DNA of 28,894 nucleotides. Origin: Bugula neritina. Its lineage: Eukaryota; Animalia; Bryozoa. Within the stretch, counting starts at the first letter, position 1. Each line of letters starts with the position of its first letter. Where the stretch lies: NCBI GenBank assembly GCA_964035545.1, contig CAXIUT010000033.1, positions 1-28,894 on the forward strand, written 5' to 3'. Shown in pieces: positions 1-28,894 of this stretch. The translations under genes were made by a program, and so were the position numbers. The notes below the pieces were generated by a model. The model searched no databases. It was not told where the DNA came from and saw nothing but the letters and a program-made list of their open reading frames with translations.

Positions 1-87
1 CCCAACCCCAACCCCAACCCCAACCCCAACCCCAACCCCAACCCCAACCCCAACCCCAACCCCAACCCCAACCCCAACCCCAACCCC
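1..87 (+). repeat. Left telomere, (CCCCAA)n
   Basis: Perfect C4A2 hexamer array from base 1 to 87, followed by AT-rich subtelomeric sequence. This is the Tetrahymena/oligohymenophorean telomere repeat. Confidence 0.98.
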
Positions 88-5810: not shown

Positions 5811-5951
5811 AAATCTACTTTGGCTTGAAGTCATCATTTATAATGTTTATCTATATTTGATAACTTAACATTTATCGATTTTCTCAACAGTATGATATTG
5901 TTAATTTGCAGTATGACATATATATTATTCATTTATTTGGCAGTAGTTCAA

Positions 5952-6020
5952 GGGGTTGGGGTTGGGGTTGGGGTTGGGGTTGGGGTTGGGGTTGGGGTTG
6001 GGGTTGGGGTTGGGGTTGGG
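5952..6020 (+). repeat. Internal (GGGGTT)n telomeric tract; right telomere of the 6 kb unit
   Basis: 69 bp perfect G4T2 array, 141 bp after the Rab stop, in the orientation of a right chromosome end. No C4A2 tract follows it. Confidence 0.95.
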
Positions 6021-6703
6021 AAACTCACTAAAATGCTCATCTATCTCTTCAAATTAACTGACTCCATCATCACCATCTACAGACAATATCCCACCTACCG
6101 TATGGAAAGAATTTCTAGTAAAAACACTCTAACCCAGTACACTTCCAAAGAGCAAGACAGTTCATGCGACTTGGTAAATTCCTAATGGAATATCAAGAAT
6201 CTATCAGTCTCATTAACCGATAAACTAGAGATGAATTCGGTCGACTTACCAGCATCTTACTTCATGCCATCTTCAGTTTTTACTGGGCTTTAGATAACCT
6301 TTCCCTTGCCGCTGCATATGGCTTAGTTAATATAGCAGAACACTAGTTTTCACAATCAGCCATCACAGTCAAATTCATTGGAATGGCCATTGCAGCCTTT
6401 TTCAACTTGAGGACATGGCTTCGTTTACATCATCAAGAACTGCAACTGAGGAAACAATTGAAAATATTGAAAGGAAAGTAGAATTTGGAGAAAGATAAAG
6501 AATTGATGGAAATAGTGATAAAGCAGTGGAAAACATTTCTACTTTGTATTAAAATATATGCAGATATGCTTCCCACAATTGGAAAGTCTGATCTGGCAAA
6601 AAAAATTATAGGGAGAAAAATTCCAAGAATATTTCAAGCCTTAGGTGGACTTGTCAGTGCCCTCGTTTCTTGTTTGTTGGCAGGTGACAAATCTCTCGTC
6701 TGA
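6021..6703 (+). CDS. PEX11: Peroxisomal biogenesis factor 11 family protein, 5'-truncated at the telomere junction
   Basis: KLTKMLIYLFKL corresponds to the conserved GRDK..R..QY segment but lacks GRD. After a 20-nt intron: ISIHFQRARQFMRLGKF, FYWALDNL, IYADML, ALGGLVSALVS, TGA 6701-6703. Spliced length is 663 nt. Confidence 0.82.
6118..6137 (+). other. 20-nt spliceosomal intron (PEX11)
   Basis: GTAAAAACACTCTAACCCAG with a CTAAC branch motif. Removal exactly restores the frame into ARQFMRLGK. Confidence 0.85.
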
Positions 6704-6893: not shown

Positions 6894-9800
6894 TCAAGAG
6901 TGAGATCTTTTCTTTTTGGTTTTATCAACTCCATGTATTTTGCTTTGAGCTTTAACAAACCTCTGCATTTTTTCTGCCTCTTATCCCATCTCTGTATTTT
7001 AAGCCTTTATAGTTTCTATAGCTGAAACTTTATTTCTCTGCAAATTGGGATTCAATGAAGTATGTATTTAACTTTTCAAAATATTAGTGTCAGATAGTCG
7101 ATATCTTGATTCAAAAGGCAAACTATTCTCTGCACTTACAAAGATCTAATAGTCAGAGTTATCATCAAGCAATTTAAATTATATCTAACCAACTCCGTTT
7201 CTACTGCTGGTCACGTTGACATAGTGTTGACTGATAACTTGAGTGTTATTCTCATTGTATCCATTAATAACTTGATCTGATAATAAAGTTACACCGTTTC
7301 CAATCTTTTTCAAAATAACAGCATAGATGAAATTGCGACCCCAGAAGGCAACTTTCATCTTTACTCGATCATAATTCTTTTCAGTGATTTTGATAGCATA
7401 ACGAACGCGAGGTACTCGATTGAAAATCTTTTTGACTGGTGATCGATAAGATTTGATATATTATGGAATAAATTCTTTTAACATAGCTTTTGCATCTGCA
7501 TCTTTTTTGAAGTTTCTGAGAAGGTTTATAGGTCGAGTAGAATCATCAATAGGGTTGGGAGCCACCATTGTTTCATAGACATATAATCTTTTATTCATTA
7601 CATTCGATCTAAATGATGACTTCTTTCTGACTAAAATAGTGGAAGTTGTAATAATAAAGATTCTTGATTTTTCAATTCTGAGCACCTAAGAAAGGAATTA
7701 AATATAAGCTGTCTAGTTAATAATTTATTTCATAGCCAGTTTAATAGAAGCAGCATTTGACATTTTCTTAGTTCTGAAATTGAGGAAGAATATCTCTGAG
7801 TTGCCAATAGTTGAGTTGAGATAAACTGCTAGTCTATAACTAGTCTGGGCCTTGAGTCCTGTTGCTAACACAGTTGAAATAGTATTAACTCCTGTTCCTT
7901 GAAGAGCAGCTTTCTGAGAACCATAAGTAACTCCTGAAGTAACATTGTTATCATAGATATCTTTAATATTAATTCTAGTTTTAGGAGTACCTCGAGAAAT
8001 AACAGCATAGTAAACAGTGCCGATATATGAAGTAGTGATAGTAAAGTTAGCTGAGTTAGAACTGGTAGTGCCTTTAATTACCTCATAGACTTATGGAGCA
8101 TACTGCAACACATTAGTAGTAGATTGTTCTGTTGATACTATAGTATGACCTACATCTGTAGATTGTTTTGCTGTACTTGATAGTTCAAGTTTCATGGGAG
8201 ATTAAACTGAGGTCTTGTCAATAGAAAGAGAAGAAGAGTAGTAAACCACAGGATTTTCAATGTAATAATTGTTAGTAGTTAGAGATGAAAGGGTAAAGTT
8301 CTGAGAACAAGCTGCAGGAATGACATCACCTTTGTACTGAACTGTGAAAGAAGCATTGTTTGATTTGGCAGGTATAGTGATTCTATTGGTAGGAATAAAG
8401 GTAAAGTAAGAACTACAGTTAGTTTCAGTCAAAAGGGCAAGAGCAGTTTGAGTAGGAACTTCAAGAGAAATTATGACAGTGATAGCATTGCCTACTGATT
8501 TAGCTATGAAAGGTTGAATCTATATTTTATATTTTCTAGTAGGAAGCTCGATATTAAGAGTGATAAATTGAATATCGTTGTAGAAAATATAGGTTCCACT
8601 TTCCTACTTGGTAAAGGTCACATTGAAAGTGCCTTCTAATCCGTTAGCAGCACTGATGGTAAAAGCCTTTTCTAATTCTCTGTAACTACTGAAAGTTATG
8701 TTAGAAGGTTCAAAAGAAATAGCTGATGATTCGCATGATGGAATTACTGATAAACTTCTTGCTGGTTTTTGTAAAGATATCTTAAACTCTGAAGAAGAGC
8801 CTGCTGAGAATTTGGTGTTACCTGTCACATTGATGGCATAAAGGTGAGTACTGAAAGTTGGACAAACTTCTTTGTTGGAAAGAGTTTGAGAGTAAATGCT
8901 GTTGCCTTTGAAATCAAACAAAGAAATGGTAAACACTGGTAGAACTGTGCAGTCAATAGTTTCATTGGGATTTCTAAACCAGAAAGAAATATTGAAAGTT
9001 GTGAAATCAACTGCAGCAGGGAAAGAAGAAGGCTCATAGATTGCAAATAGATATCTTGGAGAGAGAGTCACATTGCTGGAAGTGTAAGTATCGCTGCCTA
9101 TGCTCATGTTCAGAGCATTGGGAGTTTTGATCTGGTTCCAAATGTCTGCATATTCTTCAGGGAAATGAATTATTACCCCTATTTTTGATTTTTCAGAAAT
9201 TGAGAAAGTAGCTCCACTAGCTGCATCCAAGGTAAAGGTGTAAAGACTTACTGAGAAATATTTATCATTGCTGAGAGTGATTCCTCCGATTTGCATATCA
9301 ATGGGAGGATCGCTAACACTGAAACTTAAAGGACTAGTGAACATCAAAGCTGCCTGAGTGTAACTACTAGTAGTATTAATAAAGGTAAAAGTAAAGTTAA
9401 CTTTTTTAACGTTTGTCTTAGGGTTGAGAAGACCGTTTACTGTTAAATAGAGGAAACTGTTTGCTCGAAGATTTTCTAGAACTGTAGTGAGACCCTTGAT
9501 GGTTATTTTCTGTCCATTCATACCACAAGACAAAACATTAGTACCTTCTTTTAATTTCAAGTTCATGTAATTATCAACTTGTATGTAGTTCTGGTAACCA
9601 CAAGAAATGCCTGCTTCGCTTGCAACTATATCACTTGCTATTTGGATTTCTAGAGTTGAAACTACAAAGTCAGGTTTAGTAATAGCAAAGGTATAGATAG
9701 AAGAATAAAGTCTGTTAAGTGGAGAGTTGGCACTTCTGATAGAGATGGCTTGTCCAGTAGAGGTGATGATAGTACCAGTTGAGCTGCTAGTAACAGAAGT

Positions 9801-12800
9801 AGCTGAAGTAGAAGAACTACTTGATGTGATATAGAAGGAATTACTTTAAGCAGTCATGTAGACAAATCCATTGAAGTTTATCTTAGATTAGAGAGTGTAT
9901 GTTCCAGAGTTAGGATTGGTTATACTACCAGTTACACTTACTAATTTCTGAGCAGTGATTGATCGCAAATATATACTTAGATAAGTAAGTTTTGTGGTTC
10001 CACTGTATTCATTTTTGATATTGCATTAACTGCTGTATAAAGTGGTGCTGTCACTTGTGCAAGTTCCTTTACCAACTGGAGGACTCCAACTCAAATATAT
10101 TCTTAACTATGAAGCTTCTTTTATTGAAGAAGGACAAATTAAACTAAGTTGATATTGGGCAGGCAAATCTGGGTTGCTGATCGAAAGATCCACTTGAAGT
10201 TTGCACGCTTTAACTGTAATGAGAGACAAAACTGGACTTGCAAATGTATTCTAACTGATAATGCTTGGTTTGTAAACGCTGGTAAAATAGAGAGTTTGGA
10301 TCTTAAACTTATATTTTTTGAGGTCAGTATTGGGATTAGTAATATTGGTAACAGTTAAGTAGTAAGGTAGAGTTTGACTAAGTAACACTCCATTGGGTAC
10401 CACTACCAGTTGATAGTTATTGATAATGGAACAATAGGCTTGAGGTCCAGCTAATTTTTGAGAATCAGCTCTTAAGAAACATTTAGAATTTACATTAAAT
10501 AGAGAAGTATAAATTTCAGGGAAAAATATAGCAATTTTGCCTTGTTCAGGAAGATATGAGTTGAGTTGGAAGGAGAAATAGTAGTTAATACCTGAGTCAC
10601 CTCCATAAATAGAGTCAATAGAAGTGATAATAGATGAAATATTTTTAGATGCTTGAGTAAACTTAAGGAATTTGGCAGTACCTAAAGCATCCACTTTACG
10701 GTTAACCACTGTGAAGAGAGTCACTGTTTTATTAACATACTCAATTTAATAGGCAGCATTGAGAAGCTTTGTAATCGTGAAGTTAAAATCTTCTGAAGTA
10801 ATGGAAGAAGAAGGTTGGATGTAAATTTGACTCGCAAGACCAAAGACATGACATTTATTTCCACTTGCCAAACTGCATAAACCTTTTTCGTTAAGGTTAA
10901 ATCTGCCTTCAAATGTGAACTTGGGGAATTGGATGACCAAGTAGTCAGAAGTTGTCACTGTTGCGAATCCAGCTCCAATTTTTCCTTGCAAAGTGTAGTC
11001 AGTAAGTTATCCAACATAATTATTACCTTGTTCAGTCACATTGAAGGTTATAGTTTTTGGTGTGACTGCAGCCGAAGGAGGACCTACTACAAAACTAACA
11101 GGTTCATAGATGTATCCATTGACTCCTCCATAGTTAAAGTAAGTCAGACTGACTCCCAATTTACAATAGTCAGTTATTCCTGAAGGTAGAGTTTTTAGGT
11201 TAGCAAATTGAACACGAACAACACTATTGGCATCAATACGGTCATAACCGGTAATACGGATAGTAGGGTAGGTAATTGTAGAAACAGAAGGATAGATTTG
11301 ACACTTGATTCGACCCATTGTATTGAATGTTAGACCTGAAATATCAAGGCAAGCTATTTAGTCTCCTGCCTGAAGACCAGTACCGAGGTCATTTTTGAAT
11401 GTGTTTGCAAATTCAACCTAAATGGAAGAAGTAATTGAGTTACTGGCTGAGCTATCATATGAAGGAAGAATATCACTAACTCCTAGCGTAAATTGAAGAT
11501 CAAATAATCCCATACTATCACCATCTTCAGGAATACTGAAAGTTATACTAGGAACATCAAGATAGTAGCCATAAACAGTTGTTAGGTTGACATATTGAGA
11601 CTCAACAAGAGCATTTCCTGATGTCCACAAATTAACTTGCATTTGATAGTGATCTCCAGGATATTTGGGTGCAGTGAAAAGTTGGCTGGCACTACTATGG
11701 TCAAGTCCAATCAAGTTATATCCTTGGTTGTAAGTATTACTTGAAGGAGTATAGCTGATAGTGATTTGTGAATTTTATCTTTCCACTCCACAACTAAAGG
11801 TCCAAAGAGAAGTAGTAGTAGGTTGGAGAGTACATCTATTAAGAGATCTAGTTGTTGTATAATTGAACTAACGAGGCAAAAGGAAAGTCATTTTACTGAT
11901 AAGTGAGAGAAGAGGTAGGAGTGGATGGTAGCAAGAAGCCATAAAACATGCACTGTTCTCCGACTTTACAAGTTCGTTGATTAAAAGATTTTGTGTAGAG
12001 ACTGATAACATAAAGATAAGGTAGCAAGAATTATTCGATAGGGAAATTACCAGTTGCCTGGGCTACATAGTAGTCACTACCTGTTGAAGTTTAGTGTGTG
12101 TAAGCATTGGCATACCATGATTTAGAAGTAGTATACTGCCAGTTTTGAATCGTGTATCTGAGGTAGATAAAGATAGATCTTCCCGTAAATTCACTGGTCC
12201 AGTCTGGGAAATCACTTTGGAAGTTAAGTCTGACCCAACTTGTGCCCATTCCTACACAGACAAATCGGTAGGGGTAAGGAAGAGCTTCTCCAGTATTAGT
12301 TTGCATAGTGGCGTTGCAATACTGAGTATCAATGCTAATATCGTTAGAAGAATATAAGTATATTTGTTTGATATTTTTATTTTGGAGCATATGTTTGATT
12401 TCTATTCTAGCGATGTTGTTGAAGCCATATTTGAGTTGATAGTTAGGAGTGAGGGTGGGTGTAAAGGAGATAGATAGAGGTTGCTGGTAGTAGGGTCAGT
12501 ATAGAATAATTCCACCTGAATAGCTGGTATAGAAACGATGGGATAAGACACCTCCTTTCCAAACTTATGAGTAAAATGTGTTTGTACCATAGTATCTTTG
12601 GTATGGATTAGTCATGCCACCTAATTGGAAGCTATAGCTACTATGAGCTGATGAAGCTTTGATCATGATAGTATTAGTAGTGGCATAGGAGTAACATTAG
12701 CCGTTGTTTGAAGTGAGAGTACAGACTGTAGGAATGGGTACTTCACTGTAATAAATAAGTTTGATCCAGTCTCCAGCACTAATGCTGTAGCCAGCACTTA

Positions 12801-15800
12801 CCGTGTGAACAGTGTTAGTAGCACTGACAATGGTTGGGTTGAAGGTAAGTGATCCAGTGGTTCCGATTCCTGGAATATAAGGAGCATTATTGAAAGTCAT
12901 ATAAGTAACTGATTTATAATAAGAACAAAGGTTATTGGAGTCAGACCAGCTGCAAGTGTCAGCCAACTTGAAGACCATTCCAATAGGATAGCTAGAAACT
13001 CCAGGATTAACAATATTCAAAATATTAAATTTGATAAGAGTATTAGCAGCAATATCTTTTGTAATAGGAATAGCAATAGTAGTAGGTCTAGGAGGAGTGG
13101 CTGATTTATCACCTTGGTATACTCTGCATTTTATTACACTGTCAGAAATAACATGAGCCCCGTAGAACTAGCTGCAGTCGAGAGATCCAGGATTCGGGTG
13201 AGGAATAGAAACTCCTAAAGTGTTAGAGAATAGTGTCTCTTGAAGTCCATCTCCAGTAGTAAATTCTAATAAAATTGTATCTCCAGCAGTGGCTGAAACG
13301 TTAGGAGTTACTGAAAATTCATAGAGTGTATTAGCATTGACATAGTCAAGAGCTGAATCGACTGCAAAAGAAGCATGTCCGTATGGTTAAGTCCATACTC
13401 TGTATACTTTTTGTTCGACGATAGTATTGGATTTGAAAGCAAATATTTTGAAGTTGTTCCATTGAATTGAAGGAATTTTAGCACCATAGTGTGTACTTGG
13501 AGCATGAGTATCAACCCAAAGGGTAATCTAATTGTTATGAGTCATGGAATAGTTGAGATAAACAGGAACTTTGAAAATATTTCCACTAACATGAGTAACA
13601 GCTGAAGGAACCCAATAGTTATTTCCATTAATCTGATACTTGATGATTCTTTTGCCTGTTGTAGCAGCATCTAGAACCCAATCTCCAAAATCAACATGAA
13701 GATAATCTCCATTGACAAGAGTATGCGATTTGAGAGTAAATTTGATGTAGAGTGGGAAGGTGCTAGTGGCAGTGTAAGGAGTGATCATAGTTCCTTGTAA
13801 AGCTACATTTTAACTGCCATGAATCAAATCAACATTGAGTGTGAGACTGTCAGTAGTTGCTGAGATGATGTTATTATTTTAACTTGATTTGACTGTGATG
13901 GTGGTACTTGGATTGTATGTTGAATTATTTGTAAGAGATGATTTTATTTTCATCCAGACTGTGATAGATAAGCTGGCACTAGATGCTAAAGCTGCATATC
14001 CACTGATTATTATCTGATTTGAAGCTAATCTCTTGCACACTAAGTTGCTGTTATCTTCTATGCCTTGAATAAAACCACTGTAAGAGTAGCAATGCTCATC
14101 CATAAGTTCAAGTTCTGAGGTAAATTCAATGATCATGTAGCTTCCTTCTGGGAACTGTAAGTAATCAGCAGACCATGAAAGGGTATATTTATCTTAAGAA
14201 TTTGTACCTTCAGTGTTGCTTCCTTTAGTGAAAGATGAGCTAGTCCATGAATTGGCAGCTGAAATAGAGTAAGTAGCTGTGTTAGAATTCGAGTGGAACC
14301 ATGCTTTTCTTCGATAAGTACCTTCAAAAGTTTGTACGAATGTTAGTTGGAAGTTTTGAACGTCAATAGAAGTTGGATAGGTTCCAAGAGAGAAAGTATC
14401 TGCTGATCCTGAACCAGTATATTTAAGTGAGCAGAGGTTGATATTTGGATAGTATTGATATTCATAATTGCTGTTACTGAGGGAAGTAAGTGTGCTAAGA
14501 CTTGTAAGTGCAGGAACAAAATTATTTTTAAACTTGACGAGAGTAGTATCTCCATTTCCAAAGTTGTAGGTAGAATATTTGAAACTTACTGACATTGTTT
14601 TTTGCACTTCATTGTTGCTAAGACTCAAATAGGCATGTTGGTTGGAATTACTTGTTGTACCTGTGCATCTTTGCTTGGCTTCATAATTGTAATAGCTGAT
14701 AATAGTCGGGTAAGGATTTGCACTTGAGTAATGGAGTAATTTGACTTTGTAAGTCAAAGGAACATTAGTACCAGATGGGAAAGTAATAAGAGGGAATCTG
14801 AAATAGTAAGTACTAGAAGTAGAGAGAGCTCCATAGTCAGTGATGGATAGAATTGCTGGAGCCCAATTTTGAGATTAAGAGTTTTTACCGCAACGAATTC
14901 TTGTGTTAGCATTAGGACCGCTTTGACTTGAGAAGTGACTGTATTAGACTCCACTATAAAAAGGCATATTATCAGGAGAAAACACTGAATCAATATTGAG
15001 ACAGTCATCATAGTATTTGGACTCAATTTAGAAAGAAAGGACAGATTCAGTGATAGGAGCTGAAGTAGAAGCAGCGGACAAAGCAAATGAAGGTCTTAGA
15101 TTAAATCCAAGCATATCATAGTATCCACTCTGAAGATGTGCATGATCAACTGAATAAGAGTTCATGTATCCAGCAAAGTCAAGAGTGTAGACATCTCCAT
15201 AGGCAATGTTGAGTTGACTGTTATAGATCAGAGAAATTTATACTCTTTGAGGAGTAGTTGGCATATTGAAAGTACTACTCATCTGTTTTCTGTCGATTAT
15301 AGTCAAGAGATATTCAGTATTGATGGCAAGACCTCCAATAGGAGCCTGAACTGTAAAGGCAGGACTATTGTAAATACATTATTGAGCTTGAAGACCTTGT
15401 CCATAAGAAACATATTGAGTGTTTGTGGGTTGAATGATGCAGAAAAGACCATTGTTTGGAGTAACTGGAGCAGGGAAAGTAGTAGATGAAGAAATAAAGC
15501 GGAATGTTTCGATCTAGGAAATGTCATAAGGAGCTTTAAACTTGAAGAAAAGTTTGCTTGTAGTTTGTCCACTCTTGGCATTTAAAGTTTTTCTTTGGAG
15601 TTAGTAGTATCCTTTAGTATATCTCATATGCTGATAAGTCCACATGTTAGGTGTTCCATAGTTGCTACTCGTGCTGAAACCGACATCAGATGGGCGGAAG
15701 TTGCTTGATCGAATGTTGAACTCTAATTATCCGTTATAGTTATAGACACTGGAAGTATAGTAAATTCTGTTATTACTATTAGCAAACAATCTAACTCTTA

Positions 15801-18800
15801 GATACCAGTGTTGATTATAGACGAAGGAAGAGTCCATCATTCCAGTAATGTTGACAAACCATCTGTTATTGTTAGTGTTGAAGCCAACAGTTGCGCTGCC
15901 AGTAGGATTGATGACTCCTGAGTAGTATCTGAACCAAGCAGTATCAAGTTATCTGACTCCACTTGTGAACTAGAGAAGGATATAGCTCATATTGCGACCA
16001 GAGTAGCCACTAGAAACAGGATCAAAATAGAACTAATAGGTCAGAGGGAAATATTGATGTGAGTTGAAGTGATTGGGTTTAGAGTTGGCTATGATACTGG
16101 GTGAAGAAGTGGCTAAAAAGTCATTGTTTCTATTGTAAGATGAGAAACTGTATTGAGAAACAGTATATATATTATAGGTTTTATAGCCACTATACCATTT
16201 GAAGGATACTTCAAGTCCCTTGTTATAAGTTTCTTTGTCTACTGCATTAGGATTCTTGACGTTATTGATTTCAAAGACAGTATTAGTATTTACATTTCGA
16301 CTTGGTAACTGATAAACAGAGGTGTTTGCTCTTGTATTAACCCACAACTTAGTGTAAGTCATGTAATTATCAGTTATTGAAGCCAAATTTGCAAAAGAAC
16401 TGCAGCAAGTAATACCACCATCAATTTTCATAACAAATTTATCATGTACATTAGAACCACTGGAATAAGGCCAGCCTACTGTTAACCTATGGTCAGTTGA
16501 ACTGCCTCTATAGGTGTTCTGAGGTGATAGACTTCCAGTAGATCTGACTGTGTTTCTGATATCGATGCTGTCAGAGTAGAATACGTTGGGGAAGAAAGAG
16601 GTATACATTTTTTCACCACTTGCATCTCTGTAGTTAGCTCTGATATTGATAGGTACTGCGAATAAGGTTTGTTTGGGAGGGTTATTGAAATTATCAAAAG
16701 CAAGTTGTATATTTTTATTGGCATAAAAACCTCCAAAGTTGAGGACTCTAATAGTGAGAGGAGATGTTCCGTTAGAATCAGGTCCATAGCCAAAACATTG
16801 AACTCCTTCTGATTTACCACTGTATGCTAATAGGTTGTTAATGTAGCAGGGAATTTTGTCTCCGTTTTTAATGTTGAAATAGTTGAGATCTAGATTGTCA
16901 ATAATGAACTCTAGATAGAAGGCGGTGGAAGTAGTTATTTTGAGTGTGAGGTCGATGTAGAGAGAGTTGGTAGTTGCTGCTTCTCTAGTGAGGATGTAAA
17001 TATTGTTGAGGTAGATGGGGTTTTTATGCTGATATTTGAAGACTGAAAATTGGTCGAAATATTTGGTTTGATATGAGCCTTGTTCTCCTGTACCGCTCCA
17101 GACTCGCACATGATAGTTATGAGCACTTGTAGAAGCAGAGATCAGCGCAGAGCTGCTCCCTTAGTTGGCATAGGCTATAATTTAATAATAATAGTTAGGA
17201 GATAAGATATGTGAGGGAATTGATTTGATTAATATCCTTGTACTGTCATAGCTTTTACATCCAATAGTATACTCATCATATAGATGGTAGGCTGTCTTAG
17301 TATATTCTCTGATCAGACATTTGTACTTTGCACTGGAGTAGAAGATGATGGCTTCAAAATTAAGATGGCATTAGATGAACTAGCAACTGCACCATGAGTA
17401 CTTGTGCTATAAACTGACACATACTGGTAGTTATTATTGATTGTTAGTCGAACTGGACCCATATCTGTTCTGAGTTACTTGTAGGCTTGTTTTCTCCAGA
17501 CGATGTCGGTGCTTGGTAAAATGGTTCGGCTGCTGGGATTGTTGGTGATAGTTTTGGTGACATATATCGATCTTCCAAAATCAGAGCTCGAGATATATTT
17601 GTCATAGAGTTAGAATGTGAAAGTAGTACTTGAGGGAACAGAACTTGTTGACAAAGTTATCACTAGAATACCAGTAAAATGTATATCAGAGTTGCTTCTA
17701 ATATTTATGACTGTACTGGATATTACATCACAGTAAAGGGCATTGTTATGGAATGATGGTTTGTTGTTGTAATGTAGATGAACTCCACAGCCATAGAGAG
17801 TGGTGAAGCTGCTGGCAGTGAGTTTGATAAAAGATCCTCTGAAAGGACCAGTAGTTCTTAGGTTGCTGTACAAGGAAAAGCCATTGAGTTGTACACTTAC
17901 AACAAAAGGAGTACTTGAAGTCTTCAGAGTATTTCCAAATATAGGAACAACTACACCGAAGCTGGGAGTAGCTGAGGTGAGAGCAGAATTGCCTCGATTT
18001 GTACTACTAATAGAATAGTAGGTAGAGTAGCCACCTCTTGTCCACCCAAGGTAGCGGTTATAGAAGTTTGTGCTTTGATCTCTGGAATCAGGGAAAGTAG
18101 CAGTTAAATCTATAGTGTTGTAATATTGACTACCATTACGACGAGCAACAAAGAAATACCTTCGATTGATAAAAGAATTATAGACTCTACATTCAACATA
18201 GTTGTTATTGTTGCAGAATGAAGTGGTTGGAATGGGATAATAACTTGAATAATAGATGAAAGGTTGGGAGTAGGTAGCATAGACTCTAAGATACTGGTAA
18301 AATCTTTTGCTTTATCTGACTTTTCCTCCAGCATTCCAGAAATAAGATGACTCATCAAAGTTACGCATTGAATTGCTTGTTCCAGTAGTGCTCAAATAGA
18401 CATGATGATCATATTTCATGTAGGGAGACCAATGGTGGTGAGGAAGGCCATGTTCTTGGATAAAATGCATTGTATTCCAGTAAAAACTCAAAGTTATTCT
18501 GTTTCCATTGGAGGATGACGAAGGAGTTCTGTAGCCTGGGAAGTAGCATCTCAAATAAGAATTAACTGGAACATCTCTTCTAATAGTAATGAATGGTTGC
18601 ATGCCTGATCTCAATGTACGAGTACAGTTGCCATCATAATAAGTGGTTGTTTAAGTGCTAGAAAATCCACTACTTGAATATCTGCAGCGGCATTCAATGT
18701 AGGCTACTTCTTAGCTGGAAGAAGTATGGGGGAATGGATTGTTATCTGCGTAAACAGTGTTGCCACCGGAAGTAAATTACATGATTAACTCTGCGTGGGC

Positions 18801-21800
18801 CCAGTTGGTAAATGAAGTCATGGAAGAAGTGATGGGTTTTTTGATTTTTTGAAGATAGAAACCAAATTAAGTTTAAACATTGTATTGATTACTGACGAGA
18901 GAGGCTGATACTGAATCTGCTAGGGAGTTGTAGGGTTGAGTATATCCAACACCTTGAGTACCTGTGAAGGTAAAGTAGTCATAGCCCATTATTTTTCTAC
19001 AACTGCAATATGTTCGACAGCAAGTAGAACAACATACATATTCATAATATGGGTATGTACTAATATGCCGAGTACAACCCGTTACGCAACAAGGTTGATA
19101 ACAACATCCACAAGTACTTGACTGATAGTAATAATAGCTATTTTACCAAACCATACTTGCTGACACCCATAGATGACGAGGGTAGTTGCCAACATTGCCA
19201 CTAACAGAAGCAAATGTAAAAGTAAATTAGTAAGTATCTCCATTAGAGTAGCTGGGCCACTGGTAAGGATAGCGACTACTAGTTGGTGTGTAGTACATAT
19301 CGAATATAGCATAAAAACGACGAGTATTATCACCTCCATTTCCACAATATACTCCAAAAGCACCAGGATTGTAGGCATTGCCATTGAAGTTATTGGTACC
19401 CCATCGACTTGTCCAAACTGATACACTATTGCAAGTGGTGGTCAGCAATCGAGGAGTATAAAATCTGAAGCCCATTCTAAAAGCTTTATGGAAACTATAT
19501 GAAGTAGAAGCATATAATTTAACTTTAATTTGAGTTGAAGAAACATAAGTAACAGTGGAGTAACCTTAGGTTCTGACATTGTTGCTAGTGGTAAGAGTAC
19601 GAGTTGACCCAGTATTACTTCCACTCAAGTCCATTACATTATTGCCAAACTACATTTAACTGCCACGTAATACACTGTGACCAGTATTCGAAGCATACTT
19701 GATATAATCGTAGTCCCAGTTCTGAGCAGTAGTTGATACGTACATAGGCCATGCTCGATTATTGTAGGCATCTTCATTAGCCCATACATAAACTATTACA
19801 TCGAAATTATTAGGTGCTGAGTTAGTAGTTCCATAGTAGTAGAGGTTAAATCTGGTATTAGTAAACCAAAACACATTTCTGAAGATGACTCTGTTGTTTG
19901 ATCTGTCTACAGTACATCTAATAGGGTTGAGAGGGTCGTTTCCGATCAAACCTGCCTACAAATTGCAATTTTTGCCTGTTGATGATAAAGAATCATACTG
20001 TCTCTTTTCACTACCATCTATCTTGAAGTAAACTTCAACTACTTTTTCTGATGGATCTTATTCGCTTCTACTCAAAGTTGACATGATGTTTCCTGCATTG
20101 ATGGAGGCATAGAACCAACTATTCCACCCTGATATTTTAACTTGAGTATCCAAGTCATACATGCTCATTTGTCCAAATATATTAGTTTTTCTGTGGCTAG
20201 AGATAAAGCTGCTTGGAACTGATGCTGTATAGACTTTGTATGCAGGTTTCAATAGCATATATATTTTATAGCTATTTACGATATGATGTTTCATTCTCAA
20301 TTGTCCGAATGCATGATAGCTACTTATTCCTCCGAAAGGTGAGTAGTTGGAGTGGTTACTTGTACTAGCTGACCATCCTCCAGTATATTTCTTAACAATA
20401 TAGACATAGTGTTCATTTTGACCTTCAGACATGAAGAAGTGATCGTAGGTGATACTAGATGAGTAGACATATTCTCCAATATTTTTGTAAGTATCATCTA
20501 CTAGTTGCCACTTCAGAATGGCATAAGTGTTATTTGTTAAATTTTATTGAGATGTGTAGCAGTGATATTATCCTCCTGTTTGCCAAAGAGATTTGGTTGG
20601 ATAGCAGGACAAGGAACCTGTTGAACTGTAGCCTACAGTAGTATAGATTTTAAAAGCATCTATAAGGTCATGTTCTCCCATGAGTTATGCTCCCATCAAG
20701 TTAGGAGTTGAAAAACTTCCTCCGAAAGCTTTCCATTTGAAAGAAGGAAATACATCTGGAATGTCAGGATTAGTAAATAACATTCTAAAGCTGAAGGTAG
20801 TACTCAAAGTATTAAAACCACTGACATAGATTCTAGTGGGAGATCCAAATCCATTTGAAGATCCTTTCTGATAGTAGCAGTAAACTTTAGAGTAGACTCC
20901 CATTGAACAAGGATATTCTGATCCTGACTGTAATCCCATAAGAGTAGGACTATTATAAATCTTAGTTCCATCTTTATTCACCACAGGAATTTCAATAACG
21001 AATCCATTGATGTCTGTTCTGGTAAGAGTTACATTGAATTCGAGATAGTTGAGAGCTCCTTGGGTTAGAGTACCATAAGTTACAGAAACATCTTGAATTC
21101 CATAAGAAGGATAAATTGCTGATGTGTTCGTTGCTCTGTAAAAGGTATGGAAAGGATCAGGTTCAATGCGATAGGTGACTCCTGAATTTCTGTTGTAGAT
21201 GTCGATTGGCATGCTGACTGTGGGATTGTTGAGGTTAGAAAGGATGAATCCTTCATCTGAGACATCTCTTGGGTTGAGGATTGTGAAGTAGGCAGCTACG
21301 TGTTGTCCATTGGTGAGAGATTGTTGGAACTGCATGGTAATGGTGGAACTTGAAATGGAACAGCTGTGTATTTTGAAGCCATTGAGTCTGCATTCAGGAG
21401 TGTAGAAGTATAGGTCATTGTTTCTTTGATTGAGAGTAGGATAGCTATAAACTCCACTGAAGTCAACTTTAATGTGATGATAGTTTGATCCTGATTGGCT
21501 GGAGAAAGTGGATGGTGCGATGAATTTGAAGGAAAAAGGTGATTTTTTCATATTATCAGCGACACCACTGTTAGTGAAGAAGTAAGAGGCGGGTTACCAT
21601 TCATTGACATAGAGTTCTTCTGGTGTAGAAAGATGACTGTGAAGAGGGTATGTTCCATTGGTATAACCGACTTTATTATGATTAACTGAGCTAAGTTTTG
21701 AACTATCTTGTTTCATGAAGCACCAATTATCACTGTCGCGAGTAATAGTAGGTTTGTCCATTCCATCAGGCCAAGTGTAGTATCTGATGACGAATTGGTT

Positions 21801-24800
21801 GTTATTGGTTGCTGATGCTCTGGCAATTTGTATAGCTAGCCCTGCAGTTTATATTGAAATAGCACTGCTATCAGTGTAACTACTTTTAATGACAGGTGTA
21901 ATCCACATCATTCGATTAGTAATATCGATAACACAATTTTAAACTTCAATGCTTGAGGTAAGATACTAGATACATTGTCTACTTTTGAGTTGAAGGTCAG
22001 TTGTTGATTCATTGGGAAATTGGATGGAAATATATTTGACGAGTGAGGTGGAGTTGGTTGGAGAACTGGTTGACATTCTGAAATAAAGTCTCCAATCATC
22101 TCTCATCTACATTTGTTCTACTGCATAGATTTTTGTAATAGTCCAAGTTGGACTTGAAGGTTCATTGGGAGTCAAAGTTGGGAACAAATCACTGTAATAT
22201 ACTCTCTCACATTAGTCATAAGAATTATAAATAGCATATGCCTTAATAGTAGCTTGAGCTGTTGTTAGTTGATAAGGAGGGTTATAGAATAATCCATTTA
22301 TTTTACCATTTAAAGTAGTTGAACCAGGAGTAAGCAAAGTCAAATCTACTGTACCAACTCTGAAAAGAACTGTTCTACAATTTTACATAAAAATAACATC
22401 ACCTGAACTGCCCAAACCTGGATTATACTTGAAGTTGTTATTGGAATTGGCTGCTTGTCTGAGATCGAATCCAAATTTCATAATATACCAGTCATCTTAT
22501 TTCATAATTTTGGTATTTCTGAGAGAGAAGCTCAAAGAAGTACTTCTTTCTTATCGAATAGCTGAAGAAGAGGCAAAATTTCCAAGATCACTGATAGGAG
22601 TAACAGTAATAGGAAGTAATCTAATACCTCCTTCCATCATCGACCAAACAAATTTACGAGCAGTTGGTTGATCATAAGCATAAATCTGAACTGGAATTGA
22701 TTGACCGATCAAAGTTGAAGGATTGAACACCCAGAAACCAAATTTGAGGGTGCTTGAAGTTGTAATACTTGAACTGAATGAAGAACAGACTATTTTAGTA
22801 GGTTGGCTAGAGCTGGCTTGACCTGGGTAGACTTTACATTTCATTGAGCTAATGGAGCTTTAATAGAGATCGAAGATTAAGTCATCGTTAGCTTTGTAGT
22901 CCATGCCAAGGTCTGCTGAAAAGAGATTTGTTCCATCGAGGGCGACAGTTGGTATTTCTAAGACAATTTGTTGTGTGGAGCTGATGGTGGTTGAAGGTGT
23001 GAGTTTGACCATGATGAAGTTATTTTAGTTGGGGATGGTGACTGTGCTATTGAATTCGAGGGTATTCCAGTTGGGACCATATACTTCAATGTATTGAGTT
23101 TGAGCTTTATTGTTGCTGCAAGAATCACAATAATTTATCTAAATTTATGTTTTATATGAACCGATGCTGGTAGGGAATGGAATACCTTCTGTTCCTGATC
23201 CATGTAAAGTAGTAATTGTCATCTAGAGAACTGTGTTTGCTGGTAAATTTTGATATGATAGAATTTGATAGCCATAGTAATCAGAATTGCCACTGTAGTA
23301 ATTTACTCCACAACCATACTTAAGTTTATTGCTTGGGTTGAAAATAGTGCAAACCAAGTTGGAAGGAGGTGCACCAAAACCTCCATTGTTGTTAGTTATA
23401 GAATTTCTATTAAGGTTGATATAAATTTATCCACTGGAGCCAGTTCCAAAGCTAGAACAGACGAATGTTGAACCAAAATTGACATAAAATTTAAGTTATC
23501 CGGTGTATCCGGTTCTTAAAGGAACAGTTTCTAGCATAGTGAGATCAGGATCAACTTTCCAGGTCAAATTTTGTACAGGCATAATAAAGCTAGTTGTCAA
23601 GTAGTCGATTGTTTTGGCATGGGTGAAGGTGTCAGATGAATGTTGATTTGAGTAGGTAGCTATGAATCCCATACCGAGAGTATTGACAGGAACAGTTGGA
23701 AAATCAATTACTCCAAATATTTTTACTTGACTACCAGCGGGTAACTCAGCAAAACCTGTTATAATCCAGGAGTAAGTATTTTGTACATTGCAGCCCACTT
23801 CACCTTGAACGTTAACTGCAGGTTTGCCAGTATCGTAGCCATATAGAGCAGATCCTAGAGTTACTGCTGATCGACAGTGTTGTTTTATTGCTGGAACTGT
23901 GCTTGAATTATTGGGAAACTTTATTTATATTGATCCTCCTTTAGGAACTTTGTGTTGAACTGTAAAACTAACAACCACTTAGACATCTTTCTGTCCTACA
24001 TTGAGTTTATTTTGTGAGCCAACCACTTAAAATTCATAACTAGAGATAATTCCTCTCAACTCAAGCCATCTGTAAGAAGCAGTGACAGTGTAGGTAATGG
24101 TTTATGTCCATCGACCTGAACGGAAAGTAAAGCACTGGAAAGTAGTATCAACTCTGGAGATAGAGAGAGGTAGTTGCGAAATGAAGGGTTGAAGAGCAAT
24201 CAAAGACCCATTTCCTATTTTGACAGCTAGCCAGTTAATAGTTGGGAAGATGATACAATATTTATAGAAGGGGTTTTGGCAGTTGTAGATGTTTCCACTG
24301 AGAGGGAACTGAGGATCTAAGTCAACAATCCACCAGTCATCTTCATTGAAAGATCCAGCGGAGTAGGGAGTAATATTGAAAAACTGATCGCTTTTGCCTA
24401 CTGAGGCACCTGCTTGGAAGAAGTTGGTTGTGCTATCGGGCTAATTTCTGTTGGTGATGCCTGCTGATACCATATCGATGAACATGTTGTACTTGGTATG
24501 ATAGAGAGGTGTTTCAACATTAGTAGTGACTGAAACAGTATCTACTTCAAGTAAAAAGTTGATATCAATTTGTTTTGAGGTAGGACTTTTTATTTTTGCA
24601 ATAATGACTCTGAATGTTGTATCAGCTGGAATAGGTTCAAAGTTAATGATCTATATCCAGACATAGTAGTTGTTAACATTTGATTTTCTCAACTTACAAA
24701 ACATCTATTTCCCTGAAGAAGCTTGTACGAATCCACTGGCTGTCTAAAAATGACAAGGAAGAACGTTTCCTTCAGTTAGAGTAGTAAAACCAAGATCAGA

Positions 24801-27800
24801 TTCGAAGATAGCTCCATTTCCATCATTTGTTGGAAACCCGATTCTTATTCTACCGGCATTAGCACCATCATTATAAGAGGGAATGGCATTGGCACCATTT
24901 TTGAACTAAACTGTGAAGATGTTATGCAAGCCGATATCTCGAATAGCCCATGAAACATTGAAATAACCTATATCATCAGGAAGGATGTCAACCATTTGTT
25001 GGACTTTTTATAAAATTTAGGTTGAACTTTGGTTCACTATTTCCAGTTGTATTTTGTATCGTCCTTGGGCGGTAGGATAGTATATTCCATTTTTGTTTTG
25101 ATATTCTGTTGTGATGTTCAGACTGTTGGTTCCTGCAGTAAAACTGCTGTTGGTGTCAGTGACACTCACTACGAAAGGATTTATTGAGTAGGAACAGGCG
25201 AATCTTATGTCATTGAGGAGACAACTAATAGGTAGACCAAGAGAATTGGTTGCTGGTTTGAATTATGAAGGGAAAGTTACGACTAATTTAGATCCATTGA
25301 TGACAGCTGAAGTATCATAGGGATCAAAGGTGATAAGCATGTGTCCGAAGTATCCTTTGGTGATTGCTCTTGTGGAAGTTGAGTAAGCTGGGACACTGAA
25401 GCTGGTGAGTACATCTAGGTTGGTGTTGGTGAGAGGAGTGGTAGCAAAAGGAACATTGAGGGCATGATCAACAATGGCTCCATTTCCATAATATGTTTTG
25501 ATGGTGACAGTAGGTGATACAGTTGATGCTGTATTGGTACTGGTCATTCTTAGATTAATTTTGAAGTTAGTGTTTGCTGGCACATCATCCAAATTATGGA
25601 TAGTAACTGTTGTTCCTCCAGCTACCATTTCACACAGAATTTGTCTGCCATCATAGGCACTAGCAGTAGTTACTAACTAACAATGATCAGAACTCAAACT
25701 AAAAATATTGTTGATTGTAATTATTATTTTAGCATTGCCTGATTGAGTAACTAAGTTGTTGGCTGTTGTCCATTCGATAGTGTAGAAGTAGTCGGCATTG
25801 GGATGTAGTTGAGTGATTGTCTCATTGGCATGGAAGTTATAGACTGTGTTTGTTAGTGTATCAGGGGTGATAGTGACATCGAAATAACCTTTTTTGGCTG
25901 TACTTCTGCTCTTGTAAACTCTAGTTTGGAACCTGAAGTCTCCACTATAGGCTGGAGTAGTTATAAAAGGGAAAGTCAAGGATGCTGATGTTCCAAGACC
26001 AGCTGAAGGGTATAGAAGGAAATATTGAATAGGAATATCAAATTTAGAGCAGGTGTGAGTACCGCATTAAACAGTTTAGCTTCTTCCGATGTTAGGGAAA
26101 GCAGTCTGGTCAACTTCAAAGACAAAATATTCTGGGTCAGTAGATGCAAGGTCATAGCTGTTGAGGGTGATGTTGGTAACTTTGTTGATGACTGAGTTGG
26201 TGAGTGTGATGCTTGGAGTTTCTAGATTATAGCTGTAACTTCCTCCACCAGTATTGGTATTTACATCGACAGTTTGAGTATAGATATAGACGATAGGAGA
26301 TGTGAATCCAGGAGTATCTTCAAGAATTGAAAACTTCAAATAAGCATAGTAGCCACTATTTCCACTTCTTTGCATTTTAGGTATTTAGAAAGTAATGCTG
26401 CTTCCTCCTTGAATAGTTTACAGTCCATAGAAGGTGACATAGTGGTAGCTGGTTGAAAGTTGTGAGGATTTGTATGGACCTGAAGTCCAAGTGATATAGT
26501 CGCATTTAACATATGGATCAGCTGAGATTCCTCCGAACATCAGACAAGGGTAATCAGGAATAACTTGGTTGGAAGTTCCAGTCCATCCATACCAACTATT
26601 TGGCGTAGAAAATTCTACTCTGAAGAAATGGATGTGTCCTGCATCATTGAGGACTTGATTAGGAGTTGTAACTGTGCATCTAACATGGTCGTATTCTCCG
26701 ACATTTCGGTTGATAGAAGTACATGAAAGAGTGCTGATAGGTATTGAGTCAGGTATCCACTAATCAAAGATGACTTCTAGGGGAGTAGGAGCAGGACTTT
26801 AGTTGCTATAGAATTGTATTTCAAAGAAGTATCTCTTGACAAGAGTATCTATAGTAATACCTTGGTTTTCAGGTTGCTGGAAACCTTCAGTAGTAATGGT
26901 CAGAGGCACCTCGCTCTGCTGGAAGTTGAAATCGATAGGAGTGTAGATAGTTACTACTGTTTTGGTGGGATCAGTTGAATTAAAACTACAATTTTTGGCT
27001 GGAATATCATAATAGAAATAACACTTAGGAACACCATTCAATGCAGTGATAGGTGCTGGAATATTAGGGAAGATATCGATGACGATTTAACCATAAGTGA
27101 GGACATTAGTTTTTGGCAAGTTATTTCTCAAGAAAAGGACGATTTAGATAGGACCTGTCTTGGCTACTGGTAATTTGATTGGACTTTGCATGGGATGCAT
27201 TTTCATCTCCTTGATGTAGCCAGTAGTTTTATTGATAGTGATGCTTCTTGTATATCGTTGCGCAAGTCCTCCATTTTGCCTGTAAGCACTAATAGTTAGA
27301 CTATAGGTGCTATCATCTAGAGGAGTTCTTAGAGGTTGGAAAAAGATGAGTTGTTTTGATTTCAGAATAGAAGAGAAGTCATATAGTTTGAGAGTAGTTG
27401 TATTAGCGGTAGTATTTTGTTTGACACTCCATTTGGCTTAATTTTGAGGGCTAGAAGAAACTCCTGTGATGATTCTGGTTGCATTGGTGAAGAGTGTCCA
27501 TTGTCCTGTGAACTAATAGGTGATATAATCTCCAGGTTTGAGATCTGTGTGAGCATTGATTTTGAATATATAGGTGACTGAGTTGTTTCTATACATGTTG
27601 GGTATGTTAACATCAGCAACTAAAGGTTTTTGTCTTACCACAGAAGTTGAAGTTGAAGTGATTACTTCTTGAACAATGATGTTGTTTGGCTATAGAATGT
27701 GTACTTCAATACCTGAAACAGTCGTCTGGTAGTTTGGATTCACTAATCCAGATAAAATAACTGTTATTTTTCCTGATAATTGTGTTTTCAAGTTGAGGCA

Positions 27801-28478
27801 ATCAAAAACATTTTGACTAGGAAATACTCTAGTTGCCATATTGGGATCAACTACTGAGGAAACATTACATTGAACTCTGTTAGAAGCGAATCCTTATGGG
27901 AAAATAAACCTCAAAGATGATTGTGCAGGGTAGGCTTTAGAAGGAGTGAAAGTAAATGTCCAACTTGCTCCCTGTTCTATGTAGTAGTTTCTGTAGTTGT
28001 AGAACTTTCCTCCTGAAGTGGGGACTGGAGCCTTTGTAAAAGGAGTTCTTCCAAATTCATTATTACTGGTAACTACAACATTCTGGAAAAGAGTTTCCAC
28101 GATGAAGTAGCTCGATACTGGGTGGTCGATTGGGTTGCGGATGTTGTCGATAACGATAGTCATGTTGCCGATGGGGATTCTATCGGTCCACATAGTGAAT
28201 TGATACCTGAAGACTTTCCAGGTCGCATTTCTGAGAGGTTAATCTCCAATGGCGTATCTGATTCTTGAGGCTTTTGCGAGGTGATTGGGTCTAAACTCGA
28301 AGGGGAAGGTGATGGCCACTTGTGCATTGGATGCGATGTTGGTGTCTGTGTGGAAGAGGAAGGAGTATGAAGTGACTTCATCTACAGTAGTTTAGACAGG
28401 CAAGATATAGTAGGGTTTGATTTTTTGCATCTGAGCTAGTCCCAGAAGCAAGATGATTAGGCAGAGGGATTTAATCAT
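6894..28478 (-). CDS. Giant (~7,190 aa, ~800 kDa) predicted secreted beta-rich repeat protein
   Basis: ATG 28478 begins MIKSLCLIILLLGLAQ (signal-peptide-like). With TAR=Glu, more than 20 minus-strand ORF-track fragments merge into one reading ending ...KTKKKRSHS-TGA (6894-6896). It is interrupted only by local frame breaks near 17342, 12505/12480 and 11901 (net zero). S/T/N/Y-rich, with recurring I.FP, C..C and (I/V).NP motifs. Confidence 0.88.
28431..28478 (-). other. Predicted N-terminal signal peptide of the giant protein
   Basis: M-I-K, then the hydrophobic core SLCLIILLLGL, then small residues (G-L-A-Q). Cleavage site not computed. Confidence 0.75.
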
Positions 28479-28789
28479 CTAATTGATCAATAAATAATTA
28501 TAGAGATTTAATGATTAATCTCTATTTGTACTCTGCAATAAAAAACTAATTTAATTTTTATTTATTATTTAGGAGAAGGTATTTGTGATTGGATGTTTAA
28601 GTTGTTCAATTTGAATCATTTTAGTCAAATATTGTTTTCAGAAAGATTAACTTTTTTAATTGAAGAAAATGGGTCTGAAAATATTCCTAAGACAAATGTT
28701 GATAGTGTATTTAGTATAATATTGATTTTTTAATAAGTTGTTTGAATTAAACGGTAGATTATGATATCATATTTTACTATAAAACTTTA

Positions 28790-28894
28790 GGGGTTGGGGT
28801 TGGGGTTGGGGTTGGGGTTGGGGTTGGGGTTGGGGTTGGGGTTGGGGTTGGGGTTGGGGTTGGGTTGGGGTTGGGGTTGGGGTTGGGGTTGGAG
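28790..28894 (+). repeat. Right telomere, (GGGGTT)n
   Basis: G4T2 array to the end of the window, with one G3T2 unit near 28862 and a terminal GGAG (probable read errors). Confidence 0.98.

What the first reader, a model, noticed from the sequence alone, without database searches (positions are those of the whole stretch)
6894..28478. Hidden ~7,190-aa, single-exon, unanchored secreted giant protein
Seen: under the standard code this region is shredded into dozens of small ORFs, but with TAR=Glu it reads as one 21.6 kb frame with a signal peptide. It has no C-terminal hydrophobic helix or GPI signal; the tail is basic (KTKKKRSHS). I do not recognise it as a named protein. Inference: an ~800 kDa soluble beta-sandwich array in a probable peritrich is a candidate extracellular structural or adhesive material (stalk sheath, scopula/holdfast glue, lorica, cyst wall or extrusome content).
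Basis: partly seen in the sequence, partly recalled or inferred. Interest (0 to 1): 0.85.

Follow-up and report, generated by a model that had tools for sequence, protein, structure and literature searches.

The report
Giant secreted beta-sandwich protein of a ciliate
A 21.6-kb gene on a small ciliate chromosome, caught as a passenger in an animal genome assembly, encodes a conserved ~7,190-residue (~800 kDa) secreted chain of immunoglobulin-like domains that is visible only when TAA/TAG are read as glutamate; the gene is real and matches no named family, but its role is still unknown.

Summary
The window is a whole contig (C42) with C4A2/G4T2 telomere repeats at both ends, from a ciliate using the peritrich code (TAA/TAG = Glu, TGA the only stop), inside a 216-Mb host assembly. 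Minus strand 28478-6894 is one gene of about 7,190 codons with 111 in-frame TAR codons.

As assembled it is not one frame. It has four single-base indels:
- 17336/7
- 12504 and 12478, a compensating pair that creates an in-frame TGA at 12496-8
- about 11901

Near-identical strains in other sequencing runs lack the first three lesions. A full-length metagenomic orthologue (7,134 aa, 55.5% identical, collinear) lacks all four. Of 40 listed strain SNPs, 34 are synonymous.

The start Met and signal peptide are conserved in 19 aligned relatives. No transmembrane or C-terminal hydrophobic segment exists, Cys is 92% conserved, and the basic C-terminal tail is conserved. Two modelled regions fold as ~150-residue Ig-like beta-sandwiches. 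No Pfam family, paralogue or characterised homologue was found, and there is no RNA evidence.

This is a new sequence family of a known kind: giant secreted beta-sandwich arrays.

The parts
6894..28478 (-). Whole gene: ATG at 28476-28478 to the TGA stop at 6894-6896. About 7,190 codons with 111 in-frame TAA/TAG read as Glu.
   Evidence: Collinear with a 7,134-aa orthologue at 55.5% identity over 7,078 aligned positions.
28425..28478 (-). Start Met plus signal peptide (MIKSLCLIILLLGLAQMQ). The mature end starts at the conserved motif I-x-P-Y-Y-x-L-P.
   Evidence: This is the highest hydropathy window in the protein. In 19 aligned relatives Met1, K3, Q18 and I20 to P22-Y-Y are invariant or nearly so, while the hydrophobic core between them varies.
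17337..28478 (-). Segment A of the coding sequence (first frame).
17336..17337 (-). Lesion 1: one base missing relative to near-identical strains, which read ACTTCCA or ACCTCCA where the window has ACTCCA on the minus strand. It shifts the frame.
   Evidence: read-laying table 4, runs X1 and X2. The orthologues are continuous here.
11902..17336 (-). Segment B of the coding sequence (second frame). It runs through the patch at 12478-12504.
   Evidence: Orthologue alignments. SNPs at 12265-12430 fall on codon position 3 of this frame.
12478..12504 (-). Lesion 2: a 26-nt out-of-frame patch between one extra and one missing base. It creates the only in-frame TGA (12496-12498). The window reads GGIILY*PYYQQP, the other strains GGIIYTDPTTSNP, and the orthologues ..DPTTxNP.
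11901..11902 (-). Lesion 3: one extra T (minus strand CTCAC-TT-ATCAG) that shifts from segment B to segment C. The orthologues read ..SS(G/L)(I/T)xIS(H/K)MTFLLP without a break.
   Evidence: Not tested in the near-identical strains, because the laid stretch began at 12200.
6897..11900 (-). Segment C of the coding sequence (back in the first frame).
8607..9845 (-). The 413-aa stop-free piece (aa 6212-6624). It models as two ~150-residue Ig-like beta-sandwiches plus the start of a third.
   Evidence: AlphaFold2 pLDDT 85, pTM 0.74. Foldseek and VIA matches are to Ig-like arrays.
16036..17160 (-). The 375-aa stop-free piece (aa 3773-4147). Low-confidence all-beta model; residues 43-198 form an Ig-like sandwich.
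   Evidence: pLDDT 60. VIA Z 6-8 to many of the same kinds of structure (SpaD pilin, YcnI, YweA, cohesin).
6897..7900 (-). C-terminal ~330 aa with a different make-up (K/R-rich). It appears to hold a probable alpha/beta module flanked by Fn3-like sandwiches. It ends in the conserved basic tail GVDKTKKKRSHS (6897-6932).
   Evidence: Four-way alignment. Fn3-like leads come from the Atlas and weak Pfam rows. This region was not modelled.
1..87 (.). Left telomere, (CCCCAA)n.
28790..28894 (.). Right telomere, (GGGGTT)n, about 310 nt upstream of the gene's start codon.
   Evidence: The orthologue's gene also starts about 460-480 nt from a telomere.

Best explanation
Shown:
- The minus strand of 28478-6894 is one protein-coding gene of a ciliate that uses the peritrich nuclear code.
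- It encodes a protein of about 7,190 residues (about 800 kDa). The protein has a signal peptide and no membrane anchor. Its body is a long chain of very divergent Ig-like beta-sandwich domains of about 150 residues each. Extrapolating from two sampled regions gives roughly 45-50 domains.
- It ends in a distinct C-terminal region with a conserved basic tail.
- It belongs to a family conserved end to end in many uncultured relatives and kept under purifying selection.

Inferred:
- The four 1-nt indels that break the frame in this contig are most likely consensus errors in a low-coverage passenger contig. Less likely, they are private lesions of this strain. They are not introns or programmed frameshifts.
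- The protein enters the ER and is folded with disulfides. This fits 92% conservation of Cys.
- It is released as a rod or fibre some hundreds of nanometres long, into the cell's surroundings or into a secretory compartment, where it acts as structural or adhesive material. I put about 0.35 on an extracellular matrix or adhesive role. Which structure it builds is unknown.
For: Genetic code:
- Alpha-tubulins on sister contigs have TAA/TAG at invariant Glu positions.
- RPL10 on this same contig matches the Ribosomal_L16 profile at positions 1-60 and 61-132 on either side of a TAR codon.
- TAR codons in the gene align mostly with GAR or TAR in the orthologues.

One gene:
- TGA occurs 1 time in frame, against 106 and 228 times out of frame.
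- Orthologous contigs have uninterrupted TGA-only ORFs of 4,963, 4,170, 4,715 and 5,840 codons.
- A complete 7,134-aa orthologue is collinear at 55.5% identity.

Lesions:
- Runs X1, X2 and X4 lack the 12504/12478 lesions, and X1 and X2 carry the base missing at 17336/7.
- The orthologues lack all four lesions.
- No further shifted patches were found.

Selection:
- 34 of 40 listed SNPs are synonymous, and 33 fall on codon position 3.

Secretion:
- The start Met and signal peptide are conserved in 19 relatives.
- There is no other hydrophobic segment.
- Cys is the best-conserved residue.

Fold.

Cryptic internal repeats appear only with profile HMMs.
Against: - There is no transcript or protein evidence. 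No RNA run holds the sequence.
- Lesion 3 could not be checked in the near-identical strains.
- Only about 11% of the protein was modelled, and one of the two models is weak (pLDDT 60).
- The signal peptide and the lack of an anchor rest on hydropathy and conservation, not on dedicated predictors.
- The fold matches are middling (Z 7-8) and generic, so they say nothing about function.
- The neighbouring genes are housekeeping genes.
Confidence: 0.75

Rival explanations
1. The gene is a recent pseudogene in the strain that was assembled. The four indels are real mutations, and the protein is no longer made in full.
For: - The indels are in the deposited contig.
- The Logan contigs of the probable source run X3 do not cover either lesion area, so nothing contradicts them there.
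Against: - Strains about 99% identical in three studies are intact at 17336/7 and 12478-12504.
- The only in-frame TGA is the one made by the shifted patch.
- The SNP pattern is strongly synonymous.
- The local contexts that could be read look like short homopolymer length changes, and the telomere tract also shows a dropped G. That is typical of low-depth long-read consensus.
Confidence: 0.17
2. The frame changes are programmed: ribosomal frameshifting and/or TGA read-through. This has been proposed for peritrichs and for another gene of this genome.
For: - A paper title cited in PMC12411067 reports more prevalent programmed frameshifting in peritrich single-cell genomes.
Against: - Near-identical strains and all orthologues encode the same residues in one frame at these places. 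No shift is conserved.
- The TGA sits inside a 26-nt patch whose other frame gives the conserved DPTTxNP.
Confidence: 0.03
3. The region holds several adjacent genes, or exons separated by tiny introns, rather than one continuous coding exon.
For: - Tiny ~20-nt introns exist in this lineage. The orthologue has one at codon ~151, and many relatives seem to share it.
- Peritrich intron lengths are narrow, like those of Paramecium (PMC13685798).
Against: - There is no extra sequence relative to the orthologues at any frame break.
- The five window-specific insertions of 5-12 aa lack an intron that could be removed in frame.
- Identity to the orthologue is uniform (38-68%) along the whole length, with no internal start or signal peptide.
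- 3n introns are rare in most ciliates.
Confidence: 0.03
4. The protein is not extracellular. It would be an intracellular scaffold of Ig/ASH-like domains, such as the giant central-pair proteins of cilia.
For: Foldseek and VIA list ciliary central-apparatus chains and MSP/ASH domains among the matches.
Against: - A conserved N-terminal signal peptide.
- Highly conserved cysteines.
- The same lists are dominated by extracellular adhesins and pilins with equal or better scores.
- The MSP/ASH-type matches cover only a 78-residue partial domain.
Confidence: 0.05

Closest known systems
Ig-like domain arrays of Gram-positive surface adhesins and pilins (PrgB Ig-like domains 8beg, antigen I/II C123 7l0o/3qe5, Cna/ACE collagen-binding domains, SpaD/BcpA pilins)
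   Same: Tandem beta-sandwich domains of about 130-150 residues strung into a rod. These are the best Foldseek (E 1e-9 to 1e-7) and VIA (Z 7-8) matches for both modelled regions. They are secreted and have a structural or adhesive use.
   Different: - Sequence identity is only 5-12%.
- No Pfam CnaB, DUF11, SpaA or Big match.
- The source is eukaryotic, with no sortase signal or cell wall.
- Isopeptide residues were not examined.
- It is roughly 5-20 times longer, and its repeats are too divergent to see without profiles.
Giant eukaryotic Ig/ASH-domain ciliary proteins (central-pair chains in 7som, 7sqc, 9ijj) and the Chlamydomonas mastigoneme protein (8wa2)
   Same: Very long chains of Ig-like sandwiches in a ciliated or flagellated protist context. 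They appear in the Foldseek list at E 1e-7 to 1e-6.
   Different: - The central-pair proteins are cytoplasmic and lack signal peptides.
- TM-scores are low (0.14-0.21).
- No sequence similarity was found.
Unannotated metagenomic orthologues (for example JGI 3300029955/3300029914 contigs = L019+L013; Logan SRR7182477 = L015; JGI 3300073936 = L016)
   Same: - True orthologues: collinear over the full length at 44-65% identity.
- Same code, start, signal peptide and C-terminal tail.
- In the L019+L013 relative, the same position next to a telomere and next to RPL10.
   Different: They are only DNA contigs cut into dozens of 'hypothetical protein' fragments by standard-code gene callers. None is characterised. 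Many carry a 20-nt intron at codon ~151 that the window lacks.

Membership tests
Peritrich nuclear genetic code (NCBI table 30) | TAA and TAG encode glutamate | tested here: met
   - Tubulins on sister contigs have TAR at invariant Glu positions.
- RPL10 on this contig is continuous across a TAR codon.
- TAR and GAR interchange in the orthologue alignment: window TAR aligns with E 15-27% and TAR 11-16%, against Q 8-13%. That alignment was made with TAR = E, which biases it slightly.
Peritrich nuclear genetic code (NCBI table 30) | TGA is the only stop codon | tested here: met
   - The gene and its orthologues end at TGA at the same aligned residue.
- The single internal TGA lies in a shifted patch.
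Secreted, unanchored protein | Cleavable N-terminal signal peptide | tested here: met
   Hydrophobic residues 5-15 follow a basic K3. The core varies while its flanks are conserved in 19 relatives. No dedicated predictor (SignalP) was available.
Secreted, unanchored protein | No transmembrane helix and no C-terminal GPI-type hydrophobic tail | tested here: met
   A Kyte-Doolittle scan finds no 19-residue window above 1.63 other than the signal peptide. The last 60 residues are polar and basic in all four species. This is hydropathy only.
Pfam Ig-like / Fn3 / CnaB / DUF11 / PKD / ASH families | Sequence match above the family's gathering score | tested here: not met
   14 stop-free pieces of the window (about 2,760 aa, 38% of the protein), one C-terminal piece of orthologue L016 (221 aa) and four homologous fragments gave no family at E <= 0.1 that reaches its cut-off.
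Isopeptide-forming Gram-positive adhesins and pilins | Ig-like (CnaA/CnaB-type) sandwich fold | tested here: inconclusive
   The best structural neighbours are of this kind, but at Z 7-8 and rmsd 3-4.5 A over 115-135 residues. That is the level the tool calls a common arrangement.
Isopeptide-forming Gram-positive adhesins and pilins | Lys-Asn/Asp isopeptide triad and a sortase (LPXTG) signal | not tested
   The residue geometry was not examined. A sortase signal is not expected in a eukaryote.
Giant central-pair / hydin-like ciliary proteins | Cytoplasmic protein without a signal peptide, built of ASH/MSP domains | tested here: not met
   A conserved signal peptide is present. The MSP/ASH resemblance is limited to one 78-residue partial domain.

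The most novel reading that the evidence does not exclude
This may be the founding member of a sequence family found so far only on peritrich-code ciliate contigs: ~800-kDa secreted rods of about 45-50 hyper-divergent Ig-like domains. On this reading it polymerises or cross-links, through its distinct C-terminal region and basic tail, into the extracellular attachment apparatus of sessile peritrichs (stalk sheath or holdfast matrix). That would make it the first identified protein of that material.
Probability: 0.15. Interest if true: 0.7.

Novelty: new variant of a known kind. Interest (0 to 1): 0.45.

Why it matters
- It shows how genes of code-variant protists are lost in public data. One conserved ~800-kDa protein appears in databases only as dozens of short 'hypothetical' fragments, in at least 19 lineages.
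- It gives a complete, comparatively validated gene model, with a full-length orthologue, for one of the largest predicted ciliate secreted proteins. That is a concrete candidate for proteomic or localisation work on peritrich extracellular structures, whose protein make-up I believe is little known.
- It is a caution for this assembly. The contig belongs to a passenger ciliate, not the host, and it carries small indel errors.

Tried and rejected
- **Internal repeats.** Self-BLAST and phmmer of 250-aa chunks found none, even at E 10-50. Only windowed profile HMMs built from four species gave weak reciprocal hits, best i-E 2e-6.
- **Periodic motif.** A recurring [hydrophobic]xNxxNP motif was not significant: 33 NP dipeptides against 26 expected.
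- **Paralogues in the assembly.** Two pieces and two profiles hit only the window itself. The other ~5,500-aa secreted protein noted in this genome (s1-435673) is therefore not detectably related over these regions.
- **Introns as the cause of the frame breaks.** Rejected: there is no GT..AG and no extra sequence relative to the orthologues.
- **Programmed frameshifting.** Rejected (see the rival explanations).
- **RNA evidence.** No run on record as RNA holds the sequence.
- **Language-model look-alikes.** Only unnamed ciliate clusters and weak Fn3 or BslA leads.
- **The peritrich stalk paper.** Jiang et al. 2025 is not held in the library, and a stalk/scopula proteomics search found nothing relevant.
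- **Species identity.** No tool could identify the ciliate by rRNA.
- **Limits of the searches.** The tools take no protein read through a stop. All searches used stop-free pieces, so full-length searches against annotated ciliate proteomes were not possible. The one exhaustive search (a 413-aa piece) returned 75 hits, none longer than 699 aa. No full-length annotated ciliate protein was detected for that region.
Full report
**Source and code**

The window is the whole of contig C42 in a 216-Mb, 321-contig assembly. The large contigs carry multi-exon genes of a host eukaryote. Small contigs carry alpha-tubulins with in-frame TAA/TAG at invariant glutamates (FFS*TGAGK, VID*VRTG, HWYVG*GME). This is the peritrich nuclear code.

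The code applies to this contig too:
- A ribosomal protein L10/uL16 gene at 4261-4926 (minus) matches the Ribosomal_L16 profile at positions 1-60 and 61-132 on either side of a TAR codon.
- In the giant gene, TAR codons align most often with GAR or TAR codons of orthologues.

The contig starts with (CCCCAA)n at 1-87 and ends with (GGGGTT)n at 28790-28894. It therefore looks like a complete small macronuclear chromosome of a passenger ciliate.

**The observation**

With TGA as the only stop, the minus strand has three very long open stretches: 17313-28637, 12496-17580 and 6894-12611. In the assembled reading path there is 1 TGA in 7,192 codons, against 106 and 228 in the other two frames. The chance of such a TGA-free run is about 1e-73. 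There are 81 TAA and 30 TAG codons in frame, which cut the gene into 114 pieces under the standard code.

**The frame breaks**

The window is not literally one frame. Contigs of four other public runs were laid on 12200-17700. These runs come from three studies under three organism labels.
- X3 is identical to the window and only 2x deep, so it is probably the source.
- X1, X2 and X4 are about 99% identical strains. X1 and X2 have one more base at 17336/7. X1, X2 and X4 all have one base fewer at 12504 and one more at 12478.
- Applying those changes restores the frame at the first break. It also turns GGIILY*PYYQQP into GGIIYTDPTTSNP, which removes the only in-frame TGA.

Orthologues read ..DPTTxNP at that spot. 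Orthologue alignments also place the last frame change at about 11,901 (one extra T), not at 12,496-12,611. SNPs at 12265-12430 fall on third positions of the middle frame, which confirms that frame. A scan for further hidden shifted patches found none.

The window therefore carries four single-base indels. The local contexts that could be read look like short homopolymer length changes, and the telomere tract also shows a dropped G. I read them as consensus errors of a low-depth contig (about 0.75) and less likely as private lesions (about 0.17). The third break could not be checked in close strains.

**One gene, conserved**

The protein searches returned only short fragments, as expected for standard-code gene calls on ciliate DNA. 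Fetching their contigs gave uninterrupted TGA-only ORFs of 4,963 (L013), 4,170 (L015), 4,715 (L016) and 5,840 codons (L018-L020).

L019 and L013 overlap identically. Together they give a complete orthologue with these features:
- a telomere at the start of the contig
- ATG at 506
- one 20-nt GT..AG intron at codon ~151
- a stop at 21,930
- 7,134 aa

It is collinear with the window protein at 55.5% identity over 7,078 positions. Identity ranges from 38% to 68% along the length, and only a few 5-12-residue gaps occur. None of the window's extra segments could be an in-frame intron, so this copy is intron-free as far as comparison can show.

Between strains, 34 of 40 listed SNPs are synonymous and 33 lie on codon position 3. 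RPL10 lies downstream of the gene in L013 as in the window, and the Rab-like gene and gene Y match the neighbours in L015.

**Protein features**

- Nineteen aligned relatives all begin M-(I/M)-K-S-L... They have a variable hydrophobic core followed by the invariant Q..I-T-P-Y-Y-x-L-P, the pattern of a cleaved signal peptide.
- No other segment reaches transmembrane hydrophobicity, and the C-terminus is polar and basic.
- The tail GVDKTKK(K/N)R(S/R)HS is conserved.
- Cysteine is the best-conserved residue: 92% against a 55% average. This fits disulfides in a secretory-pathway protein.
- No Pfam family was found in 14 pieces covering 38% of the protein, in an orthologue's C-terminal piece, or in homologous fragments.
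- BLAST and phmmer see no internal repeats. Profile HMMs built from four species give weak reciprocal matches between distant ~100-residue segments. This fits ancient, strongly diverged domain duplication.

**Fold**

AlphaFold2 with a 49-row alignment modelled aa 6212-6624 well (pLDDT 85, pTM 0.74). The model is two ~150-residue beta-sandwiches and part of a third. Foldseek and VIA place them among several groups at Z 7-8, the level of a common fold:
- Ig-like arrays of Gram-positive adhesins and pilins (PrgB, antigen I/II, Cna, SpaD)
- cohesins
- YcnI
- MSP/ASH domains
- ciliary central-pair chains and the mastigoneme protein

A second region 2,400 residues away (aa 3773-4147) gave a weaker all-beta model (pLDDT 60). 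Its best domain hits many of the same kinds of structure. Extrapolating from these two regions gives roughly 45-50 domains and a rod some hundreds of nanometres long. That figure is an inference. The C-terminal ~330 residues differ in composition and carry Fn3-like leads only.

**Function**

Shown: a conserved, selected, signal-peptide-bearing, anchorless, beta-sandwich giant.

Inferred: it is exported or stored in a secretory compartment, and it serves as structural or adhesive material.

Nothing ties it to the stalk, scopula, lorica, cyst or extrusomes. The neighbours are housekeeping genes. No RNA run holds the gene. No paralogue or characterised homologue was found. The one recent paper on stalk composition that I found cited could not be read.

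**Verdict**

The gene is real and well defined, and it is hidden by the genetic code. It belongs to a new sequence family of a familiar kind. Its frame layout needed correction, and its functional proposals remain open.

Noticed in passing
window 5952-6020: An internal telomere-like tract, (GGGGTT)x11.5, in right-end orientation. It lies about 140 nt after the stop of a Rab-like GTPase gene and 874 nt from the giant gene's stop. Bases 1-6020 thus look like a complete 6-kb minichromosome joined to the 22.9-kb part that carries the giant gene. Relatives link the same neighbours without any telomere repeat. It could be an interstitial tract, an alternative fragmentation site, or a chimeric join.
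   Followed up: partly
L019:960-979 (orthologue), equivalent to window ~28,020: A 20-nt GT..AG intron (GTACATTTAGAATCATTTAG) at codon ~151 of the orthologue. It is absent from the window. Many relatives diverge into read-through sequence at exactly this point, while at least four (P0127, P0136, P0142, P0145) continue in frame like the window. This indicates presence/absence variation of a tiny intron among species.
   Followed up: partly
window 4261-4926 (-), 5181-5810 (+), 3053-4159 (+), 6062-6700 (+): The neighbouring genes are:
- RPL10/uL16, with one in-frame TAR (..GK[E]NFH..)
- a Rab-like GTPase ending in CKC
- a DUF676-like putative serine esterase (weak Pfam match, E 7.6e-4)
- an unidentified gene Y

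The gene order is partly shared with L013 and L015.
   Followed up: partly
runs X1-X4: The same ciliate, 99-100% identical, turns up in sequencing runs filed under three different organism labels in three studies. It may be a recurrent associate or contaminant of several hosts or samples.
   Followed up: no
G000 contigs C87, C16, C255 (L001, L003): Alpha-tubulin genes with TAR = Glu on at least two small contigs (C87, C16) differ clearly from each other. They could be paralogues, or more than one peritrich-code ciliate may be in the assembly. C255 also holds a tubulin match with in-frame TAA/TAG but was not examined.
   Followed up: no
whole protein (window 6897-28478): There are only 69 N-x-S/T sequons in 7,194 residues, although N makes up 7.8% and S+T 21.7% of the protein. 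My rough expectation from composition is about 115, not a tool result. The sequons look under-represented for a secreted protein.
   Followed up: no
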